From Diadema antillarum (Eukaryota), in the NCBI RefSeq assembly GCF_040938485.1, contig NW_027270992.1, forward strand, positions 3,100,001-3,164,000: DNA of 64,000 nt. Reading direction: 5' to 3'. The notes beneath the pieces were generated by a model that saw only the letters and a program-made list of their open reading frames with translations, made no database searches and was not told the origin of the DNA. Of this stretch, positions 418 through 56,748 are shown in pieces; the first letter of the stretch is position 1, and each line of letters opens with the position of its first letter. Both the position numbers and the translations under genes were made by a program.

Positions 418-2329
418 ATCTCTCACATGTAAGCCATTTGATGAAACCCCCTACTACAAATCACATCCAAATTAAAACACGTAATTTGTACATTCAGCTG
501 TACAGTGTGGTAGACTTTACTTTTTTTCCACGTTTATGGCAGTTGATTATTGGTAAATAAGTTTAGATTTTTTTTTTTGCAGTGTTGAGGTGTGGTCAGG
601 AAATACTTCAATTTATCACTATTGTACTTTGAAATGTACTACATGTGCGATATATGTACTGTTAGATACACTGTGTAGCCTTCATCATTTCATGTATAGT
701 AAGAGCAGACAGCAAAGTGAAAACAAATGAACTACGGATATAGTGTAATTTGAACATACAATGTATGTATAATTTGTACATTTTTTAATCACATTATTTC
801 AACTTAAGCCTTCATTATAAAAATTTGGCCATGATGGTAAAACTGTTAATGTTGTACCAAACTACTAAGGAAGTTTCAAAGCTAGCGTCCCATTCCCAAC
901 TGTCAATAATGAGTTTAAAAAGTTGTCACTCTGGGAAGGACGTTCAAAATAATTCCTCAGGTGTATAAGTGTCTTTAAAGTTGGATATTCTATGCCACCA
1001 ACTACTCATAAGGAACTGAAATTAAATGTTCTATAGTTTATAAAATATTAGGCATATTTCAGTTGTTTCTCCATGCTCTTGAAACTCCTTCATTATACAC
1101 TTTCATTTGTACAATGTACAAACGTACATGTACAAGTACTGTAATACACAATATATTTACTGTATATTCATGATAGTTCATGATCATTGTTCAACAACAG
1201 TGCATTATTTCAAACAAAGTACATTGTAAACTGTTTGACTCTGAATTTTGATGTCAGAGAAATAATTTGATATGTCACATTTCAGTCTGATTACCATGTG
1301 TAGTAGACTCTCATTACACATCAAAAACACAGGATTAACACAAACTGGTTACAAGTTATGACAAAGAAATCTTCCTGGTCTGACTGTAGATTTTGTTTTT
1401 TAATTTGTTGTCTTTTACAACAATCCTTGGTAAAAAAAAAAAAAATTGCTTCGAAGTTCAAAAAAGAAAATATATTCATTGCTTCACAGTTCAAATTACA
1501 GGTGCAAGTTAATGTTCATGTGCATTAACAGAACTAGGTTTGTTTTTATCAAAATGGGCCAAAGTCCATACTGTACTTCTGATGAATGATTTTTGTATGG
1601 TATATGTAAACAAATTCTGGGCAGTTGTACAACTCAAAAACATACTCTACACATGTGTACACTTGTCTGTATGCATAGATGAACATGCGATGTACAATTA
1701 CATGTGCAGACAAACGGCATAACAGTTCAATTTTCAAACACCCAAAACACACAGCCCATCCCGACTTGGCATAATTGTACCTGTATGTACATGTACATTT
1801 AATTCACTTCATCACAAAAAACACAACCGTGAACTAAAGTGTTTCAACTTTTCCATAATTCTATCACTTGTAATTATGATATGTACCCATCAACATGTCC
1901 AATGAAATTCAAATATTCACGCCTAAAAAACGAAGTACAGCATGAAAAGTAGGTGTGTACAAATGTACATTGTATTTGCTTCTATGAATAAGAGCAAGGT
2001 ACAGTAATTGCAGTGATAAAAAGAAAATTGTTGTACATGTAGCATGGAACTGCAAAAATTTAGGTACACCAGGAACCAATGTACCAACCACTCACCATTA
2101 CAGACCTTAAGGAGGAAAAACACTCACAGTGGATTCTTGTTTTAAAACATATGAATTAAAATCATATGAATTCTCTAACAAACAATTTTCAAAGCCCAAA
2201 GGTACAAGTTACATGTATACGTAACATTTTTCAGTTAAAAAAACAAGGAATCTGAGCTACGCTGTACAGCTGTACATGATTCTTCATGTTACCAGTATAT
2301 CTGATAAGGCCTGAAAATTGAGTGCTTTT

Positions 2330-3985
2330 AAAAAGTGGATATAATCGTCTAGATCACTTGGCCATCCACACAAAACCGTACTGTGTACGTTGCTTACATC
2401 AACACCCAGGCCAGTATACTGTATACGCAATGGTACAATGTAGCTATCAGAACTCTGATGTCACCATCTGGTGCCAACATGCTGTCCACAATTTCCTTTT
2501 GGATATCAGTTTCTGTGTTCCGGTGGTACATATAAACTTATTTGAACATACCTGTGGCAATTAACCTTCTGGAAGCATTGCGATAAAGGTCGCGTACACA
2601 TCACTGCACATTTTTCTTATCATCCTTTCACAACATGCACCATGGATCTTCAAGTCATCTGCCAGCCACTTGAACATTGTATCTAAATCTCTTGCACCAG
2701 ACTTGACAACATGTTTTATATTTTGTTTGTCCGGCAACTAATTTACCCACACATAATTGCGAAGACCAAAGTTTTCGATGATACCGCTACGCACATCTCT
2801 GGTTGCAGTGGCTGTCAGGGCAACAGCGGGAACTGACGAATTGAGTTTCGATCGTAATTCACCCAATTTTCCATACGCTGCTCGAAATGCTTTGGTGTCT
2901 TCAGATGCGGTCCCCCTGTGATCTATTTGAAAAATAATAATAAAAAAACCCAGTAAGATTTAAAAAAAAAAAAAAAAATTCTACATTGCACATCCATGTG
3001 ATTTTAATAATGCCTGCAGTCTCTACAATGCATATCGCATAGCCATAAGACTGCATAATTTTAATCTATAGATGAACAAGTATGAGTACATTTGCATACT
3101 GAAGCATGTTCCTATTTGAGTTTTTTCTCAACGTACATGCACATGAAGAAGTAGTCTGTGGACCACAGCGTATGTCTCGGTCGCTCCTCTGTGTACTGGA
3201 GCGGAGCAAAGCCACCGAGACACAGCTGTGGCTCACAGACTATAAAGGCAATAGGCCTATGTGTAATTGCATTTGTATGCGAGAAAGTTACAGTAATTAC
3301 TGTACTGTATAAAACAATTAAACCAGTGCAGTTACGGTGTTAACAATTTATCACAATTACACAGGATTTAACTCATCCCTCAGTACACCTAGCAACACTC
3401 ACAAGAGTAGTAGTAGTAGAAGCCTGACATGTGTTTACCTTACCCGGCCCAGACCCTGAGGCCAGACATTTAACTACATGTACATTTAGTTTTACAATCC
3501 TTTTTTGTTATTCAACTAGGGGCCTACAGTTACAGTTTGTAATTCAAGACAAGAGACACTCAATGAAAGTTGTCTTGACGAAACATTTTTAGGAACTGGA
3601 TAAATGATTAGCTTACCACTTTGTCACGCAGGCCAAGCAAGATCCATAGCCCTGCTCATCTTGTCCGAAATTAAAGACTTCAAAGGTATGACAACAAGAG
3701 CCACAGCTTTCGGAGAGTCTGGTCCATCATGTAGATCTACATATTGCAGTTTGCGAAGAAAATCAACGCATAACGGTGCAGCTTGGAACACCACACTATT
3801 GCCGAAACCAGTCGGCAGGGAGATAAACAATCATGACCACGCACGGAAAAAACGAGTGTACAAGTAGTATGGGGACTTTAGTTCTGGTTCTGCTGCTGCT
3901 CCCTGAAACCGTCAACGAATCCCAAGCTTCTCAGCAGCACATTGAATGCGCTTCTTAATATCGCTGTCAGAAAAGCGACGCTGAT
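2330..3985 (-). pseudogene. Degenerate intron-containing RecQ-like SF2 helicase, probably transposon-borne (AcademH-type)
   Basis: Minus-strand segments in RecQ order: FISLPTGFGNS (Walker A, K>N) and VALVVIPLKSLISD (3830-3650, donor at 3616); possible middle exon about 3240-3100; AFRAAYGKLGELRS..VPAVALTATAT (2922-2800); MYHRNT..DGDIRVLIAT[IAY]GLGVDVSNV..GWPSDLDDY (2540-2335). Several stops and frameshifts. Confidence 0.8.
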
Positions 3986-4939
3986 GATGACATCATTGAT
4001 CATATAAAAAAGATTTGGAGGAAATATTTTAAATACTGCACAGATTTTGGTCAGAAAACACAAGATTCGGAATCAATACGAAAAGCACATTGCGCACAAG
4101 CTGTACACGCGATCCGGGGATCCCCGATCGAGAAGTAAAAGCCACCTCGAAATTAACATGTACGAAATTTCACGATGCTTTGAATGTGCAAATATCTGTA
4201 ATATTTATATTTATCAGATTTTTCGTTGTGATTTCCAAATTATTATTTTTGGCTGAAAATTAGATTTAAAAATTTAACAATTGTGATATTTAAAATGTAA
4301 TACATAACAGTTATGGAACGAGTATAAGTTAGTCTTAATCTTATGCACAGTCTATGCACGTTCTAGTTTCATTCTCTTCTTATGATCTCTAAGACATATT
4401 ATTTGAGCAAATTTCAATTGAAAGAAATATAATTTGGAAATTCCATTAATATATGATGAGAATAATACAAATATTGGCGTAAAATACGTATGTCATATTG
4501 CTAAATGCAATGTACCTGTTTTGCAATAAGACTACAAAATTAGAGATCTATCGACTTTTTTCCTTGCCTGGTGGAAATGATTGACGCCATCTCATCGACC
4601 AATCAGGATGCTCGAAATGAATATAGGCGGAGTCTCTTCCCCGAAATATATCGGGGAGACTTGGCAAACCAGACTGGACTGTTTTGGAGGTCGAGATGCG
4701 TGCGTGCGCGGCAAATTACTAAATACACGAGCGCACCGGCACGGTGGGGCATACGCGTGCTGTAGCGGTGTGTGCGCGCAGTAAATGATCACATAAAACA
4801 GTCCAGGCAGTGGACTATGTTTTTATATGTTATACTCAATGTTATTTCGGAGCTCTAAAGCAGTTTGCTAGTTTTGTGTTCTTGATTATGAAAATACTTA
4901 TGCCGGGGACCAAAGAGCTGTAGAACGCGAACATCCACA

Positions 4940-6010: not shown

Positions 6011-6355
6011 TGGAATTTCACTGCTACATTTCTGATGTATGTGAGCCTCCTATATGTCATCATCGTTGTTCAGTGTAATTTGTTTTAAGTTTTTCAAAAT
6101 ATTGTTTCTCTGCTCAAGAATCACAATAAATTCCTCAAATCTATACATAGAGCTGTTGATTTATGCACTACATAATGTGAAATATTATGACAATCGTCTG
6201 AAATTACCCCGTACGCATGCTTTGAAGTATAACAATAAAGTAGGTATGGAAAAATAATTGTCCACTAAAAAGCTAAGCTTGTAATACAAGGATCACTCAA
6301 AACATGATAACTAGGTGTACATCATCATTTTTCAAACCGTAGTTATTACATATAA

Positions 6356-6921
6356 AGGACAATTCCACCTTCATAGATATGTGGATTGAGTGAATAGAGC
6401 AATGTTTGGTAGAACACATCAGTGAGAGTTTGAGTAAAATTGGACAATCCGTTCAAAGTTATGAATCTCATAAGTTTTTACTCAGTCACTGCTGGATGAG
6501 AACACTGGTACAGCTTTTGATGTCATAGGTGTAGAGCGATATACAGAGAATATTAAGAACAATCAACATACACAAGATATGTTTTTGTCGTATTATAAAA
6601 GAACACTTGCCTTGCTTCCTTCAGAAAGTAGGGAGAATGTTGCACTTAACATACGTCAGGGGCAAGAAGACGAAATGTGCTCTTTTTTAAACAATAAGAT
6701 TTGTGAAATTCTCTATGTATTTTCTTTATATCGTTCTACCCATGTGACATCGCAAAATTTTGTAGTCTCATCCAGCAGTGACTGCGCAGAAACTATTAAA
6801 AAAACAAATCATAACTTTTGAATTGTCCGATTTTCCCCACTTTTTCACTGATGTGTTTAACTAATATTGCTGCTTTCACTCAGTCCACATGTATGCGTGA
6901 TTATGAAGGTGGACATGTCCT
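6356..6921. mobile_element. MITE with AGGAC termini in a TTAA-like context (Kolobok-like)
   Basis: AGGACAATTCCACCTTCATA at left matches the reverse complement of TATGAAGGTGGACATGTCCT at right; longer internal inverted similarity. Confidence 0.7.
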
Positions 6922-8009
6922 CTAAATTGCAAAAAAAAAAGTTACAATCACTATTCCATGAGCAGTGTGTACTCAACAAAAGAATTTTAAAAACAAACAA
7001 ACAAAGAAACTGTCAAGAGTGGATATAAACGTGTACATACACACATGTGCGTGCATTGCCCACATTGCGTAAAAAGGGAAAACAAAAGCAAAAACAGATG
7101 AATACATTGACAAAGAACGCGACTTTGTACAAGACAACACCGGCAACATTACAAAACAACAAAGAGGACAGAAGAGAGGGGAATAAGAACAGAAGAATGT
7201 ATTTAAACGATTTGCATATTATTTTTAGAACACGCTACTCCATTGCCGCGGCAGGTGAAAACACCAATACTATCTTTAAAAAAAATGTATTTTTATCTGT
7301 TGAAAGAAAATGTTTTCTTCATTTTATTTAAACGTTGTAAGTTTAAAAACTTGTTTATACTGTTGTCAAGGTTGTTTAAAAGTTTTGGTCCAGTATTTTG
7401 GGTATGCCCTGTTCTGAATAAGGGAAGGTGGAATTCATTCGATTTCCGGGTGGGGTATTTATGGATAAGACAATTTCTGTGAAATAAATCTGGAAATATA
7501 TTGAGTTAATGATTACTGTTGTAATTGAACAAGCTGAAATTGATCTAATTCTATTATTTTTAAGATTTTCAAGGTTTTCTAAATATTTACATTAGTTGTT
7601 TGAAAGGCAATTTCCTTTCAAATATTACTCGATTCTTCATTATTCTGGGTATAATATCACTGCGACTGCAGGGGAAACGAAGTGACCGTGCTGGTAATCA
7701 TCAAGATGACATAAATGCATTTAGAGAGTTATACAGTGAAATTAGCAGTCGATTGCCGATTTATCAAAGACCTATAGTCAACTTTGGTTCAGTTGTTACG
7801 CTATCTTGGGTTTTTCCTGTTTCTACCTTTAATATAAACATGCACACACACACACACACACACAAACAGACAAACCAACAACTCTCGCTGTTGGGCGATT
7901 TCGTGTATCAAGACTTATTCTAAAAATGAGAATGGTGCTGTAAGGACATGTTATATTCAAATATGATTTATTATCCATGTCTCATTGCTTGTTTCGCTTT
8001 CTTTTGCAG

Positions 8010-50800: not shown

Positions 50801-53551
50801 ATACGGGTTTGATTGTGAAAGTGTATTATCATATTTCAAGCTTTATAACTCTCTCAGAGACTTTGGACATTGATATGTACGATGCTATCATGGGAAACTT
50901 TTTTGCCAAACGGTACGTTCAACGAAGTGTTTGGCTCTTTGGCACTGGGAAAAGGCGTATTTCAAGAACTACCACCAGTAGGCCCTTATCATTTTTGAAT
51001 CTTCATCATTGAATCAATGGATGAGTACCGGCAATACAACATGAAACACGCACTTAGATATTCCTAATGTGCTACAGGTCTATATAGGCGTATCACTTCA
51101 TGTCACTGATGTCATTATTGATATCATAATCCTTACAAGACAACTTTCTTCATTAACCAACTAATGCAATTTTATAGACGACTAAGTTTGTAGATCTGAA
51201 TATAACTTCTTAAGAAATGGTTTACAATTATGTCGCGGTATTCCCTATTGGAAACTTTGGCTAAATTCGATAGATTTCTTCCTTAAATGAAAATGTTTGT
51301 TAAGAAACCATGGATTTATTTTGTGTCAAGTTCACACACACAAGAGTAAGCAGGAATAAAACGAGAAAGATGTATTGCGTATTTCAAACTAACCATCTGA
51401 ATCAGGAAGAATGAGTTTACGAGCCCAAACCCAAAACAGCCGATCGCTAGGCACCAGACATCAGGATATGTCATCGCAACAAGGATACCTACTCCAAGCG
51501 ATCGTTGGATGATGTGGCTGTCGATTCCAGAGGTTTCATCTAAACTTTGACATGATGTTTTGCTCACACAAGAACTCATTCCGTCTTCTGAACTGTCGAT
51601 GAAAACTGTCGCATTTTCCTCCTCTGACGTCTTCGAAGCACGAAACACAGGACTTTTGGCATCATCTCCTTCGGTGTCCCTAGCAACGGTCGCCCTTCTT
51701 GTAGGATCATTTTGCAAGTGTACTTTTTCCGAGACATCAACTTTGGTAGCAGTAGACTCCTCCGCTGCAAGGGGTTTCCGGTGCGTCCAGGCACAAATAG
51801 GAAGGACGAGTACAGCGATAATGCCTGCTATAGTTCGTAAGGTGTTTCTCCAGCCAAAACGATTGTTGAAGAAGTAGATGAACGGTCCAAGGGACAACAT
51901 ACCTGACAACAAAGTCATATAATTATGTACAAGGCTCAACACTTGAATTTAATGTTTGGTATATAGCCCCCCCCCCCCCGAAAAAAAAAAATGTAGAGAC
52001 CATAGAAAGGAAGTCAATAATAATGAAACATCAATACGATTCAATAAAGCATGATGATTATCAGTTATTGCGGGGGAAATTAGCAGGTATTAGAAAGTGC
52101 TTCGAACACCACTTACGATTAACAAGAAGTTAGGAAAGGAATAGGTGAAAAATCAAATAATTTACTACGATATTTAAATAACTTTAAGCCACGATATCAA
52201 GCGAGAACAGGCAGGAAAAAGGGCTGTGAATAAGCTCGCTAAGTTTAATATTTTCAAAGTTAAATGCAGGCATAAACATGATTTCCATGGCACCAGAAAT
52301 CAATGAAATTAATGTGTCCACCATAAAGGCAGTGCAAGGGAAAAAAGGCCAAAATAGACTAGGCTTGGCTATGAAGACTAGTGTGAATCTGGTGATGGCA
52401 TATCTGTAAGATATCAGATGTTGATTAGATTTATTGACAACTAAGAAGATGGAATGACAATGACCGAAAGTTTTCATAACTAGTCGGTGAAAGCCATCGC
52501 AGTGTTCCGTTTGGAAAAAAAAAAACTTTGACGTGCTTTAAAGCGCCTGCATTGGTAGCAAATAGGTATGTGTAATAAAGATACGTTTAGATAAGTAGGC
52601 CCTACTCGGTGTAATATACCGTAGTAAATGAACAGACATGGGAAATTATTGTGCCTGGACCCAAGAAATCAAAAACAACCTGATCTATGTATAAACCAGT
52701 TTCTGTCTGACGACCAGGGCAAGGTAATCATGTGTGATTTGTTGTCAGTATCATACAAATACGCACAAAGACTGAGTGGTGGTAAAGGGCACTATAAATA
52801 GAATGATCAATAGCAAACAACCAATCAAATGACAAGGATCTATCAAGGTGTTATATGATATCACAACACGCATTGGCGTGTGAGAAATTTGCACCTTCTT
52901 TGTGAGTTGTCCATTTTATGATAGATAATAATGAAGATTGTGTGATGTCAGAACAAGAAAGTGAACCTATCAGAAATCTCCACTGAGAGTCCATTGTATA
53001 GGTTATCATTCTTACCTAAATTGGATGAGGCCATCGGCAGAGTAACGGCAGCCATGAGATGACGCAGTGGGAAGTACACATGAAGGAGTGAGAAAGAGCC
53101 GAACATGATGCAACCGGTACCCACCCCATAGAGCAGGCTGTAGGTGAAGAATGTTGGTGTGATGCTCGGCATGAGTGAGGTCAGTAATAGCCCTATGGCA
53201 AGAGCGGCGACTCCGCACGTCACTACACAGCGGTAGCCGAACCGCTCGACGAGCAGGTTGACGGGTATGGAGATTATTGCCGAGATTCCAAATGGCGCCG
53301 ATCCGATCCAGGCTGTGTTAAAAGGGAGCGCTTGACGATTTTATAAACACTCCGGACCGGTTTCAGTTTTGGAGATGGGTCTTATAATACGATGGCCCCC
53401 TGTCTATAGTGGCCACCTGCCGACCACTAAGCACAATATATATATATATATATATATATATACGATATATATATATAGACAGTGCGAGAAGATCCACGGA
53501 CATTACAGGGCATTCACAGACTAGCTAGTTCTGTACACGGACGGGAACCCT

Positions 53552-53642
<91 letters not shown>

Positions 53643-55598
53643 GTTAGTAGAGTGTGGACTGCAATATGGCTGACAGTGCTCAACTATAATAGGAGCCAAT
53701 GTAGTACAAGATATAGTAGGGTGGAAGGCGTTGCTTTATTAGTGACTTAGCTGGACAGTCTGTTTCTGCCGAAGCCTCGTCAGCAACTTAATCAGTTTAT
53801 TGTTAAAGTACAGTGTAAGATATACGGCTGTGGTGCACTCAAGCAAGCAAACAACAGATACAAAAGATACATGCACGAAGGTCAACCAATGGAAAAACAC
53901 CACCGCAGTCATCAGCTGGTTCAAGGGTACCCCGACAAGGCAAAACTCAACATTCCTTTCGTTCGACGTAGTCAACTTCTACCCGTCCATTGACAGGAAA
54001 CTGCTCAACAAGGCCACCAAATAGTCAAAAACATTCACCACGATAACGCCAGCCGAAGAAGACATCATCTTTCACGCCAGGAACACCCTCCTTTTCAATG
54101 ACAACGAGCCTTGGCAAAAAGCAAACGCAGACGACCTCTTCGATGTCACGATGGGCTCATACGATGGAGCTGAGACATGCGAACTTGTGGGTGCATACAT
54201 ACTAGGAGAAATCGGCACCGTAATCCCCAAAGAAAACATCGGGCTCTACCGAGACGATGGTCTTGCCATCATCCATAAACCCCGCAGAGCAGCCGAGAAC
54301 ACCAAAAAGATGCTCTGCGAAAAATTCAAAGAGTTCAGGCTACAGAGAACGGCCAGTGCAAATTATTTCCTCGATGTCACATTCGACCTCACCAAGAAGG
54401 AATTCAAACCGTACTCGAAGCCAGGGGACTCACACCTATACGTACATACAGAATCCAATCATCCACCCACCGTCACCAAGAGAATACCACAGTCCATCCA
54501 GACCAGCCTAACCAACATCTCCAGCAACGAGGACATCTTCAACAGCACCAAACCAGACTACGAGAAAGCACTCCACAAGGCCGGACACCAAACAACATTG
54601 ACGTGCACACTCCCAAAGAGACAAACAGCTGCAGAGAAGAAAGAACACCAAAGGAAACAAAACATAACGTGGTTCAACCCCCGTTCAACAGACATGTTAA
54701 AACAAACTTCGGGAGGTAGTTCCTAGCCCTCGTCGAACATCACTTCCCTAAAGGGCATCAGCTTCGCAAGATATGCAACAAGAACACCCTGAAAGTAAGC
54801 TCCAGTTGCATGGACAATATGCATACCACAACAAAGGCACACAACAACAAAATAATCAACAACAGTCAAGAGCAAGCCAATGACTCCTGCAACTGCAGAA
54901 AGAAGGAGGATTGCCGATCCCTGGGAAATGCACAGCCAGGAACATCCGAAGCGAAGGTAGCGACCCCAGACGACGAAAAAGTATATATCGGCCTCACCTC
55001 AACCTCTTTCAAATCAAGATATGCCACACACAAGGCAAGCTTCACAAACAGGGAAAAACGACACCAGACAGAACCGAGCAAATACATCTGGGGACTGAAA
55101 GATGAAGGCACTCCCTACTCACTCACTTGGAGGATCATCAGGCACGCCCAACCGTACTCTCCCAAAACAAACCGGTGCAACCTGTGTCTATTGGAGAAAC
55201 ACTACATCATCACGGCCAAGAAACCAGCAATCCTGAACTCAAGAACAGAACTCATTTCAACATGACTAAACATAAGAAAAAGTTTTCCCTTGCAGAGCTT
55301 CGGCTACCGCTGTGTAGTAACGTGCGGAGTCGCCGCTCTTGCCATAGGGCTATTACTGACCTCACTCATGCCGAGCATCACACCAATATTCTTCACCTAC
55401 AGCCTGCTTGCACAACTTTATAGTGTTGTTAATTAGTCACGTGCATGTATCTTTTGTATCTTTTGTTTGCTTGCTTGAGTGCACCACAGCCGTATATCTT
55501 ACACTGTACTTTAACAATAAACTGATTTAGTTGCTGACGAGGCTTCGACCGAAATAGACTGTCCAGCGAAGTCACTAATAAAGCAATGCCTTCCATCC

Positions 55599-55664
<66 letters not shown>

Positions 55665-56748
55665 GTATCTTCAGCTGCTAAACCCCTGGGCCGTCGCATC
55701 TTATAGTAGTGTTGTATAACGAGAGTAAAGAAGAGGCGGTAGACGTTGCTTTTGTATCTATAGATCTATATAGATCTATAGACGTATCTATAGATTTTGT
55801 TCTTCCCTTCCTGTACACTTATTTCTGGTTAAGAACGCTACTTATGTGTCCTGTTCTTCTTTTTCTTGTGCCTATGTTCCGCTTATTTACACATACACCC
55901 CTTGATGTAATTGCTATTATGATTTTATTAATCGCCGTTATTGTCTATTGGTTGCCTGTCTTGACATAATGTGAGGAGATTTACAATTGTGTTTGTGCGT
56001 ACTTAAATTTATTCGTATCTATTATGTACATGTGTGTGCGCAGATGTTTAGTCATACGCATTTGTAAGTGCTTATGCTTGTTTGTGATTGTATGTATGTA
56101 TGTTATATTATGTAAGATTGACGTATATATACACTCCCAATTTAATAGTGTATTTATTTTCTGCCGTCTCTGCCTCTACCATTGTTGTTATCATTTTCAC
56201 TATTTCCTTGATCATCATTATTTTTTGTATATGATATCCATGTTTTGTATTTTGTCCGATTTGTCCTCAGTCTTGATAAAGGGCAGAGCCCGAAAGCTTG
56301 AAGTAAAATCAAATTGTGAGGATTAAAAAGCAACGTCTACCGCCTCTTCTTTTATCTCGTGTTATATATCTTTCGGGATTTTTTTTTTTTTTTTTTTTGT
56401 AATCGCAACTGGAATTGAGTCTCACTGGATATGAGACCTCCCATTTATGTCTGATAAATGGAATAGTATTAGGCCTAATGATTTCATTCCACATATTTCT
56501 GGGTTTCTTATTGTTGTTGTTGAGAACTATTTATATAAACTTTCTTGACAAGAGATTATTGAAACAAAGAAAAGACACCCACCGACTGTCGTAACGCTAG
56601 AGTTAAACTCCTCCTGCAAGCTGACGAGGAGAATACTAAAAGACAATATAACCCCGAAGCTGAAGTAAAAGGCGAGGCAAGTCGAACCCGTCACTACCCA
56701 GCCCCACGACGTCCTGATCCGCTTGGCGAGGCCTGGTTTACCAGCCAT
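47617..56748 (-). CDS. SLC16-family (monocarboxylate transporter-like) MFS transporter gene, spliced, 511 aa
   Basis: Six phase-compatible exons: 56748-56583, 53312-53016, 51902-51394, 49905-49680, 49067-48924, 47810-47617; total 1536 nt. Motifs SWGWVV in TM1, ERFGYR, YSLLYGVGTG, FGWRNTLR, long acidic central loop, TM7-12. Confidence 0.9.
48924..49067 (-). CDS. SLC16-like exon 5
   Basis: tttcag|QGSVVMSVGSSLPFSIANHVFG..YGVGVILASVL G|gtatta. Confidence 0.87.
49680..49905 (-). CDS. SLC16-like exon 4
   Basis: tgccag|VSYMLSLGFTEANGAQAVVVVGIALMVGKVIVALVSD..MTLLV G|gtgagc. Confidence 0.9.
51394..51902 (-). CDS. SLC16-like exon 3
   Basis: tgtcag|MLSLGPFIYFFNNRFGWRNTLR..FFLIQM|gttagt. Confidence 0.9.
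53016..53312 (-). CDS. SLC16-like exon 2
   Basis: acacag|WIGSAPFG..LVERFGYRCVVTCG..YSLLYGVGTG..MASSNL G|gtaaga. Confidence 0.9.
53557..53641. repeat. (CT)n(AT)n compound microsatellite left of the Penelope element
   Basis: Direct reading. Confidence 0.95.
53750..53787 (-). ncRNA. Minimal type I hammerhead ribozyme in the inverted Penelope repeat
   Basis: Minus strand reads GTTG CTGACGA GGC-TTCG-GCA GAAA CAGACT GTC CAGC. Confidence 0.7.
55299..55408 (+). repeat. 110-bp inverted duplicate of part of SLC16 exon 2 (53132-53241) embedded in the Penelope element
   Basis: Reverse complement of 53132-53241 with 2 substitutions (gtagtgacg>gtagtaacg; ccaacattc>ccaatattc). Confidence 0.92.
55530..55567 (+). 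ncRNA. Minimal type I hammerhead ribozyme in the Penelope 3' repeat
   Basis: GTTG CTGACGA GGC-TTCG-ACC GAAA TAGACT GTC CAGC: CUGANGA, GAAA and GUC core; stem I GUUG/CAGC. Confidence 0.7.
55602..55662. repeat. (AT)n(AG)n compound microsatellite right of the Penelope element
   Basis: Direct reading; reverse complement of the left compound repeat. Confidence 0.95.
56583..56748 (-). CDS. SLC16-like exon 1
   Basis: MAGKPGLAKRIRTSWGWVVTGSTCLAFYFSFGVILSFSILLVSLQEEFNSSVTTV G|gtgggt. Confidence 0.85.

What the first reader, a model, noticed from the sequence alone, without database searches (positions are those of the whole stretch)
53132..55408. Penelope retroelement in SLC16 intron 1 carries an inverted near-identical copy of the host's own exon 2
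Seen: 55299-55408 is the reverse complement of exon-2 segment 53132-53241 (110 bp, 2 substitutions). It sits exactly between the end of the GIY-YIG ORF (..KHKKKFSLAEL) and the element's 3' UTR. The left junction has GAGC microhomology (element GCAGAGC|TTCGG vs host GTCGAGCGG|TTCGG). The source exon is only about 470 bp from the element's left end. Inference: during insertion the Penelope RT switched template onto the target locus or its RNA, capturing host coding sequence inside the element rather than as a flank. Predicted consequence: the SLC16 pre-mRNA has an antisense copy of exon 2 in intron 1 and could fold a 110-bp duplex over the exon, a substrate for ADAR or Dicer. Exon 2 is 297 nt and phase 1-1, so skipping would stay in frame. 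This would be a transposon-built cis-antisense regulator.
Basis: partly seen in the sequence, partly recalled or inferred. Interest (0 to 1): 0.85.

Follow-up and report, generated by a model that had tools for sequence, protein, structure and literature searches.

The report
Retroelement that copied its host's exon
An old, decayed Penelope-like retrotransposon in the first intron of a sea-urchin monocarboxylate-transporter gene really does carry a 110-base copy of the neighbouring exon, most likely picked up by template switching as the element inserted, but nothing indicates that the copy regulates the gene.

Summary
Window 55299-55408 is the reverse complement of exon-2 segment 53132-53241, with 2 substitutions in 110 nt. 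It lies inside a 5'-truncated, decayed Penelope-like element (PLE, about 53552-55662) in coding intron 1 of a Diadema antillarum MCT7-like (SLC16) gene.

About 35 other family copies were sampled and none carries the piece. It replaces the family's stop codon, poly-C tract and about 75 further bases of 3' UTR.

It is not a misassembly. Short-read contigs from two other studies bridge both junctions. The orthologous intron of Diadema setosum has the same element, the same junctions and the same copy. Insertion and capture therefore predate that species split.

Only one difference between the element's two inverted arms, and none between exon and copy, predates the split. This favours capture during integration (about 0.6) over later repair or replication template switching (about 0.25).

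The regulatory reading is unsupported:
- The copy evolves at the neutral rate (96.4% between species against 95.5-97% for neighbouring sequence).
- A longer inverted pair, the element's own arms plus their microsatellites, crosses the exon/copy pair and wins completely in the predicted pre-mRNA fold.
- No RNA data were available.

Host-DNA capture at this position in PLEs is already published for rotifers.

The parts
56581..56748 (-). Coding exon 1 of the MCT7-like (SLC16) gene, aa 1-56
   Evidence: tblastn of RefSeq protein P0001, 98% identity
53016..53312 (-). Coding exon 2, 297 nt, phase 1-1, AG acceptor at 53313-53314 and GT donor at 53014-53015
   Evidence: Sequence, translation, MCT8 match at E 1e-5, 100% to P0001 aa 56-155
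53132..53241 (-). Source segment of exon 2 that was copied
53552..53641 (.). (CT)n(AT)n microsatellite outside the left inverted arm, mirror image of 55607-55662
53642..53877 (-). Inverted copy of the element's 3' end. 53711-53877 is the arm that pairs with 55440-55606 (167 nt, 95%). 53642-53710 is the family's optional 3' 'tail'. It holds a hammerhead-like motif with a core substitution.
53875..53877 (.). Inversion junction between the inverted arm and the 5'-truncated body, with 3-nt microhomology ACG. It is identical in D. setosum.
   Evidence: loose ends
53878..55300 (+). [quoted passage not shown] It has stops and frameshifts, including a 2-bp insertion at 55265.
55301..55408 (+). Captured exon-2 sequence. 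It is in the gene's sense on the element's sense strand, hence antisense within the host pre-mRNA. TT at 55299-55300 is shared with the element.
55409..55412 (+). 4-nt filler TGCA at the right junction, matching neither exon nor family
55413..55606 (+). Element 3' UTR, resuming in register with the family. It includes the right arm 55440-55606 and the hammerhead core motif at 55534-55563. The tail is lacking.
55607..55662 (.). (TA)n(GA)n microsatellite outside the right arm

Best explanation
A Penelope-like retrotransposon integrated into coding intron 1 of an MCT7-like gene shortly before Diadema antillarum and D. setosum split.

The integration was messy, as is usual for this class. The top-strand end primed a short inverted copy of the element's 3' end. 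The bottom-strand end primed the main cDNA. The two were joined at a 3-nt microhomology.

While the main cDNA was being made, about 250 nt from its start, the polymerase left the element RNA. It copied about 110 nt of a template carrying the gene's sense strand of exon 2, 0.3-0.5 kb from the insertion site. That template was either nascent pre-mRNA or the displaced minus DNA strand. The polymerase then returned to the element RNA about 100 nt further upstream through a 2-4 nt microhomology. The stop codon, poly-C tract and start of the 3' UTR were skipped in the process.

The chimeric insertion became fixed and has since decayed at the neutral rate. It leaves an antisense copy of part of exon 2 in the intron. 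That copy probably does nothing, because the element's own longer inverted arms out-compete it for pairing.

What is shown: the structure, its uniqueness within the family, its age and its neutral evolution. What is inferred: the timing at insertion, the polymerase involved and the template.
For: Structure and junctions.

Unique among about 35 family copies. The only two length outliers are nested MITE insertions.

The local exon is the source: 98% identity against 91-92% for paralogue exons. The copy keeps the ancestral T where the D. antillarum exon now has C.

Polarity: the copy reads as MCT peptide on the element's sense strand. This fits a switch between templates of the same polarity.

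Real in other data. Shared with D. setosum with identical junctions.

Timing: 0 exon-versus-copy differences and 1 arm-versus-arm difference predate the split. By contrast 12 arm substitutions post-date it. The pre-split interval is therefore only about one seventh of the element's residence time. A later event would have had to fall inside that interval.

Other points:
- The same insertion already shows a second template-switch scar, the inversion junction with ACG.
- PLE protein cleaves and extends both target strands in vitro (PMC11167929).
- PLEs capture host DNA between the ORF and the 3' pLTR in Adineta vaga (PMC3846280).
Against: No empty site or capture-free allele was available, so the timing rests on very few substitutions (1 in 167 nt, 0 in 110 nt).

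Gene conversion between arms, or between exon and copy, could have erased older differences. One G-to-A change is shared by exon and copy in D. antillarum. It sits at a CpG, so it could be either conversion or parallel mutation.

The captured piece holds no splice junction, so RNA and DNA templates cannot be told apart.

A double switch that returns to the same RNA about 100 nt upstream has not been documented for PLE reverse transcriptases.

The replaced segment contains an unstable poly-C tract (C10-22 among copies). This is also what a post-insertional breakage model would predict.
Confidence: 0.6

Rival explanations
1. Post-insertional DNA event. After a normal insertion, a break or stalled fork at the element's poly-C tract was repaired by microhomology-mediated template switching (MMBIR/FoSTeS or polymerase-theta type). 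About 100 bp were deleted and 110 nt were copied from exon 2, 2 kb away, in inverted orientation.
For: The replaced interval contains a length-unstable C10-22 tract. A short-range inverted templated insertion, with microhomology at one junction and a few filler bases at the other, fits the textbook picture of such repair (mechanism from general knowledge). Proximity of the template is explained naturally.
Against: The event would have to fall in the short interval between insertion and the antillarum/setosum split, about one seventh of the element's residence time judged from arm substitutions. None of about 35 other copies with the same poly-C tract shows such a replacement. 110 nt is long for polymerase-theta templated insertions (general knowledge).
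Confidence: 0.25
2. The captured copy is a functional cis-antisense regulator. It pairs with exon 2 in the pre-mRNA and drives ADAR editing, Dicer processing or in-frame skipping of exon 2.
For: The two arms could form a duplex of about 110 bp, -238 kcal/mol in isolation. The structure has persisted in two species. Exon 2 is 297 nt and phase 1-1, so skipping would stay in frame. Intronic inverted repeats are known to affect splicing elsewhere (PMC13019027, abstract only).
Against: Order along the pre-mRNA is right arm, copy, left arm, exon. The two pairings therefore cross. The minimum-energy fold forms 158 + 58 bp between the element's arms and microsatellites and 0 bp between copy and exon. 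Forcing the alternative costs 146 kcal/mol.

Between species the copy is 96.4% identical, against 95.5-97.0% for adjacent element and intron sequence. The D. setosum duplex has already accumulated 5 mismatches. RefSeq models include exon 2. No RNA run holds the locus.
Confidence: 0.06
3. Assembly artefact, such as a collapsed or chimeric contig or a false inverted join.
For: PLE inverted structures are known to confuse assemblies (PMC8557442). The contig also holds a near-identical mirror copy of the whole window about 0.8 Mb away.
Against: Independent short-read contigs from two other studies bridge both junctions at single-copy depth. An independent chromosome-level assembly of another species has the same junctions with species-specific substitutions.
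Confidence: 0.01
4. The exon piece was captured elsewhere from mature mRNA by a master copy, and this chimeric copy later landed next to its source by chance.
For: Sense-to-sense polarity is what an RNA-RNA chimera gives.
Against: Only this locus and its mirror duplicate carry the piece in 1.75 Gb. Landing within 2 kb of the source by chance has odds of roughly 1 in 400,000 (inference).
Confidence: 0.01

Closest known systems
Host-DNA 'spacers' between the ORF and the 3' pLTR of Pen1 Penelope elements in the rotifer Adineta vaga (Arkhipova, Yushenova and Rodriguez 2013, PMC3846280)
   Same: Same element class and same position in the element, between the end of the RT-EN ORF and the 3' terminal repeat. 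Foreign host sequence is internalised and differs between otherwise similar copies. The authors attribute it to the peculiar PLE replication mechanism.
   Different: The rotifer spacers are 0.9-1.5 kb, their source was not traced, and they are carried by mobile copies. Here the piece is 110 nt and replaces about 100 nt of UTR. Its source is identified as the exon 0.3-0.5 kb from the insertion site, and it occurs in a single dead copy.
LINE-1 twin priming / 5' inversion and L1 template-switch chimeras such as U6-L1 and chimeric retrogenes (general knowledge; context in PMC2912911, listed, abstract only)
   Same: Microhomology-joined inversion junction. The polymerase jumps between templates of the same polarity during target-primed reverse transcription.
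   Different: Different retroelement class (GIY-YIG endonuclease, telomerase-like RT). The inverted piece here is the element's 3' end with tail. The switch is internal and double, out and back to the same RNA. The captured template is local rather than an abundant small RNA.
Replication- or repair-based templated insertions (FoSTeS/MMBIR, polymerase-theta end joining; general knowledge)
   Same: Deletion plus an inverted insertion templated from within a few kb, with 2-4 nt microhomology and a few untemplated bases.
   Different: The dating places the event at or very near the retrotransposition itself. The event also sits in an insertion that already bears another template-switch junction.
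Intronic inverted-repeat pairs that form pre-mRNA duplexes, such as inverted Alu pairs in exon skipping (PMC13019027, abstract only) and ADAR editing
   Same: Long, near-perfect inverted repeats within one transcription unit.
   Different: One arm is coding exon sequence. The pair is topologically crossed by a stronger pair. There is no expression, editing or splicing evidence and no sequence constraint.

Membership tests
Endonuclease-containing Penelope-like element (EN+ PLE) | Reverse transcriptase whose closest relatives are telomerase RTs | tested here: met
   An intact natural family copy (L048:2360-4471, 703 aa) was used. The window copy is 93% identical to many family copies over its last 400 nt of ORF. 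The AlphaFold model has pLDDT 82. Foldseek top hits are TERTs at E 2e-8, followed by DRT2, LINE-1 ORF2p and group II intron RTs. Pfam and PDB sequence searches were blank.
Endonuclease-containing Penelope-like element (EN+ PLE) | C-terminal GIY-YIG endonuclease domain | tested here: met
   The C-terminal 144-aa model has pLDDT 85. VIA-align gives I-TevI catalytic domain Z 9.2 (rmsd 2.3 over 90 residues), T4 EndoII Z 7.5 and UvrC GIY-YIG Z 6, then a drop to Z 3.2. The Pfam GIY-YIG hit on the window's own ORF is weak, E 0.021, below the cut-off.
Endonuclease-containing Penelope-like element (EN+ PLE) | Pseudo-LTR architecture: partial tandems and an upstream inverted 5'-truncated copy, with an optional 'tail' at one end only | tested here: met
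   Window: a 167-nt inverted arm plus a tail on the left arm only. Family: head-to-head and tandem copies on many contigs. Three hammerhead motifs in L048, one inverted and two direct. Definitions from PMC8557442 and PMC3846280.
Endonuclease-containing Penelope-like element (EN+ PLE) | Hammerhead ribozyme motif in the terminal repeat | tested here: inconclusive
   A core motif (CUGANGAG, a 3-bp helix II with UUCG loop, CGAAA, then GUC) is present in family copies and at 55534-55563, with 0 matches expected by chance. Rfam found no hammerhead in the window (max E 0.1) or in L048 (max E 1). The minimum-energy fold shows helices I and II only. No cleavage test was possible.
Endonuclease-containing Penelope-like element (EN+ PLE) | Microsatellite, (TA)n, at the insertion ends | tested here: met
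   Family copies end in (TA)n. Both arms in the window abut (TA)n.
SLC16 / monocarboxylate transporter gene (host) | MFS fold with SLC16-type TM2-TM4 sequence; intact exon with splice sites | tested here: met
   MCT8 and MCT10 structures at E 1e-5 to 5e-3. Weak MFS_1 hit. RefSeq names are MCT7-like and MCT9-like. Six-exon model by tblastn of P0001. Exons were not joined by me.
Insertion-time template-switch chimera | Captured piece in the same polarity as the element RNA, flanked on both sides by element sequence in register with the family | tested here: met
Insertion-time template-switch chimera | Capture is contemporaneous with insertion | tested here: inconclusive
   Both are shared with D. 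setosum. Pre-split differences are 0 in 110 nt (exon versus copy) and 1 in 167 nt (arm versus arm), against 12 post-split arm substitutions. This favours simultaneity, but the numbers are small.
Insertion-time template-switch chimera | RNA template, shown by a splice junction or intron loss in the captured piece | not testable with these tools
   The piece lies entirely within exon 2, 66-71 nt from the acceptor and 116 nt from the donor.
Functional cis-antisense / dsRNA regulator | The duplex forms in the context of the transcript | tested here: not met
   Minimum-energy fold of 2721 nt of pre-mRNA: 0 exon/copy pairs, 216 pairs in the crossing arm and microsatellite duplex. The alternative is 146 kcal/mol worse. 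This is a thermodynamic prediction only, and pseudoknots were not modelled.
Functional cis-antisense / dsRNA regulator | Sequence constraint on the antisense arm | tested here: not met
   96.4% between species against 95.5-97.0% for neighbouring neutral sequence.
Functional cis-antisense / dsRNA regulator | Editing, small RNAs or exon skipping in RNA data | not testable with these tools
   No listed run that holds the stretch is on record as RNA (several are of unknown kind). The runs laid were assembled contigs only.

The most novel reading that the evidence does not exclude
During Penelope-like element integration the reverse transcriptase can leave its own RNA and copy nascent host pre-mRNA tethered at the target locus, writing host exon sequence into the element. 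Here the resulting intronic antisense exon copy, kept in at least two Diadema species, would form double-stranded RNA with exon 2 and modulate its editing or its in-frame skipping.
Probability: 0.05. Interest if true: 0.8.

Novelty: new variant of a known kind. Interest (0 to 1): 0.4.

Why it matters
How Penelope-like elements integrate is still poorly understood. This insertion is a fixed fossil with three recorded junctions: an inversion junction, a switch out of the element RNA and a switch back. The foreign template can be traced to a defined sequence 0.3-0.5 kb from the target site.

If the capture happened during integration, it shows that PLE cDNA synthesis at the target can use nucleic acid from the target's immediate neighbourhood. 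That would give a concrete source for the unexplained host 'spacers' reported in rotifer PLEs.

It is also a caution for annotation. Exon-like fragments inside retroelements can mimic duplicated exons or antisense regulators.

As a gene regulator it most likely does not matter.

Tried and rejected
Element classification:
- Rfam found no hammerhead in the window (max E 0.1) or in an intact family copy (max E 1). The only hits were spurious mir-1277 matches on (TA)n.
- Pfam and PDB sequence searches of the intact family protein and of a 20-member alignment were blank. Classification had to come from predicted structure.

Other captures at the same site:
- Two family copies with long ORF-to-UTR intervals were checked. 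They are nested MITE insertions with terminal inverted repeats.

Contig structure and orthologues:
- The centre of the apparent giant palindrome on the contig (about 2.74 Mb) shows no inverted self-match. The mirror copies are therefore separated arms, not a hairpin join.
- The look-up of encoding contigs had no record for the gene's own protein.
- The D. setosum loci of the two paralogues (L045, L047) match this locus only at exons 1-2 and at exons respectively, so they gave no empty-site sequence.

Reads, dating and earlier notes:
- No listed run holding the stretch was on record as RNA, so splicing and editing could not be examined. The Logan contigs showed no joint that would indicate an empty allele.
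- Dating the capture against the insertion by within-species divergence alone (2 in 110 against 8 in 167) was uninformative. The four-way species comparison replaced it.
- Gene conversion as the origin was rejected, because the exon and the replaced UTR segment share no homology.
- Searches of earlier scan notes for similar captures found none.

Limits I kept to:
- I did not read or fill the three N stretches of the window.
Full report
OBSERVATION

The inverted repeat is real. The repeat finder gives arms 53132-53246 and 55294-55408, 115 nt and 97% complementary. The clean core of 110 nt differs at two positions.

The left arm lies in a 297-nt exon (53016-53312, minus strand) with an AG acceptor, a GT donor and phase 1 at both ends. 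Its peptide matches monocarboxylate transporter 8 and 10 structures (E 1e-5). It is 100% identical to residues 56-155 of the RefSeq protein 'monocarboxylate transporter 7-like' of Diadema antillarum, whose contig length equals that of the window's contig.

tblastn of that protein places coding exon 1 at 56581-56748 and further exons down to 47623. The element therefore lies in coding intron 1. I used the database protein as returned and did not join exons myself.

THE ELEMENT

The region 53552-55662 is one insertion unit, made up as follows:
- a (CT)n(AT)n microsatellite;
- an inverted copy of the element's 3' end (53642-53877);
- a 5'-truncated ORF with stops and frameshifts (53878-55300);
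- the exon piece (55301-55408) and four filler bases;
- the 3' UTR (55413-55606);
- a (TA)n(GA)n microsatellite.

The genome holds well over 100 related copies. Many are 93% identical to this one and lie in head-to-head or tandem arrays.

An intact natural copy (L048) encodes a 703-aa protein that Pfam and PDB sequence searches do not recognise. Its predicted structure (pLDDT 82) matches telomerase reverse transcriptases best, then other RTs. Its C-terminal domain matches the GIY-YIG nucleases I-TevI (Z 9.2), T4 EndoII and UvrC.

Several further features fit the published definition of endonuclease-containing Penelope-like elements (PMC8557442, PMC3846280, PMC11167929):
- the inverted and tandem terminal repeats;
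- a tail present on one arm only;
- the (TA)n ends;
- a hammerhead-like core motif in the repeat.

I built no consensus and repaired no frame.

WHAT THE EXON PIECE REPLACES

In about 35 other copies the ORF ends in ...KFSLAELG followed by TAG. After that come a C10-22 tract and about 75 bp before the conserved UTR resumes, 87-116 bp in all. In the window copy exactly this interval is missing and 112 bp stand in its place: 108 exon-derived bases plus the TGCA filler.

At the left junction the element and the exon share TT. They would share GCTT if the exon then had the C found in three of the four paralogue sequences compared. The right junction shows no microhomology.

The only two family copies with a longer interval carry nested MITEs. 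The piece reads as transporter peptide on the element's sense strand. It was therefore copied from a template with the gene's sense polarity.

The local exon is the source. It is 98% identical, against 91-92% for the paralogue exons on the same contig and on contig C165. Of the two differences, one is derived in the copy. The other is derived in the exon, a T-to-C change giving Ile to Thr, with the paralogues as outgroup.

NOT AN ARTEFACT, AND OLD

Short-read contigs from public runs bridge the left junction in run X1, with no differences, and both junctions in run X3. Their depth is like that of the single-copy exon and far below that of the repeated parts. Run X3 shares eight of ten exon-flank variants with D. 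setosum.

The decisive evidence is the D. setosum orthologue. Locus L046 was reached through the 75%-identical 'MCT7-like' protein P0141. It is colinear with the window through the whole intron. It contains the same element, the same inversion junction, the same two capture junctions including the filler, and the same exon copy. Insertion and capture therefore predate the split of the two species.

From memory only, D. setosum is the earliest-branching extant Diadema, which would put the split in the Miocene. I found no open paper here that states the date.

WHEN THE CAPTURE HAPPENED RELATIVE TO INSERTION

In a four-way alignment no site separates 'copies' from 'exons'. All differences are lineage-specific: one in the antillarum copy, two in the setosum copy, one in the antillarum exon and three in the setosum exon. 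One further G-to-A change at a CpG is shared by exon and copy in D. antillarum.

The element's two 167-nt arms show a single arm-specific difference shared by both species. Twelve substitutions post-date the split.

If the arms were alike at insertion, the insertion preceded the split by only about one seventh of the element's total residence time. A later, independent event would have had to fall in that short interval. This is an inference from small counts. It favours capture at insertion by perhaps two- to eight-fold.

The same insertion carries another template-switch scar, the ACG inversion junction. PLE protein is reported to cleave and extend both target strands (PMC11167929). PLEs in a rotifer carry captured host DNA at this very position (PMC3846280).

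I therefore put about 0.6 on capture during integration and about 0.25 on a later repair or replication template switch at the unstable poly-C tract. Whether the template was nascent pre-mRNA or the displaced minus DNA strand cannot be decided, because the piece contains no splice junction.

THE PROPOSED REGULATORY ROLE

The pre-mRNA (minus strand) does contain an antisense copy of part of exon 2. In isolation the two could form a duplex of about -238 kcal/mol.

Along the transcript, however, the order is right arm, copy, left arm, exon. The exon/copy pairing therefore crosses the pairing of the element's own arms, which is -282 kcal/mol, closer together and transcribed earlier. The minimum-energy fold of 2721 nt forms 158 + 58 bp between the arms and their microsatellites and no exon/copy pair. 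Forcing the alternative costs 146 kcal/mol. Pseudoknots and kinetics are not modelled.

Between species the copy is 96.4% identical. Adjacent element and intron sequence is 95.5-97.0% identical, so there is no sign of constraint. RefSeq models in both species include exon 2. No RNA run was available. The regulatory claim therefore remains untested and looks unlikely.

COMPARISON AND VERDICT

The closest precedent is the host-DNA spacer between ORF and 3' pLTR in Adineta vaga Pen1 elements. L1 twin priming, L1 chimeras and replication-based templated insertions are mechanistic relatives.

What is new is the traceable, local source (the adjacent exon of the host gene) and the double switch with return to the element.

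This is a new variant of a known kind. It is a useful natural record of PLE integration and of moderate interest. There is no evidence that it acts on the gene.

Noticed in passing
Whole window (contig C104:3100001-3164000) against C104:2316000-2382000: An inverted copy of the entire window lies about 0.8 Mb away on the same contig. It is 99.3-100% identical, and the differences are mostly microsatellite indels. The paralogue exon 82 kb further on is mirrored too. RefSeq lists two accessions for the identical protein. This is either a very recent inverted segmental duplication of at least 140 kb or an assembly duplication. The midpoint (about 2.74 Mb) is not itself palindromic.
   Followed up: partly
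55534-55563 (+) and about 53754-53783 (-): Both inverted arms carry the family's hammerhead-like core. In D. antillarum each has a substitution in or next to helix II. The right arm has G to A, and the left arm has C to A next to the GAAA. The left one is in sense orientation in the host pre-mRNA. Rfam does not detect either.
   Followed up: partly
53016-53131 and 56581-56748 against D. setosum L046: Coding exons 1 and 2 differ between the two Diadema species as much as or more than the introns do (92-95.5% against 95.5%). The whole proteins are only 75% identical. This suggests relaxed or positive selection, or conversion among the tandem MCT7/9-like paralogues.
   Followed up: no
53668-53763: In the Logan contigs the element's 3' end and tail reach summed depths of 1500-4100. 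The ORF reaches roughly 100-400 where it is covered. This hints at many non-autonomous derivatives of the 3' end. A 2026 preprint links animal retrozymes to PLEs (title seen, not read).
   Followed up: no
Loci L011 (C861) and L023 (C1626), interval between ORF end and UTR: Two family copies carry nested insertions with terminal inverted repeats (MITE-like). They lie in the segment between the ORF end and the conserved UTR.
   Followed up: partly
Family copies, just after the TAG stop (for example L032:1905-2010): A homopolymer C tract of 10-22 bases follows the stop codon in all sampled copies and varies in length between near-identical copies.
   Followed up: no
53078-53119, run X1 contig: One contig of run X1 differs from the reference at 10 positions within 42 bp of exon 2. 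Only 3 of these match D. setosum. It looks like a divergent allele, a paralogue or a conversion tract.
   Followed up: no
D. setosum L046, about 6109-7199: Between the element's left arm and exon 2, D. setosum has about 1 kb of extra sequence that is absent from D. antillarum.
   Followed up: no
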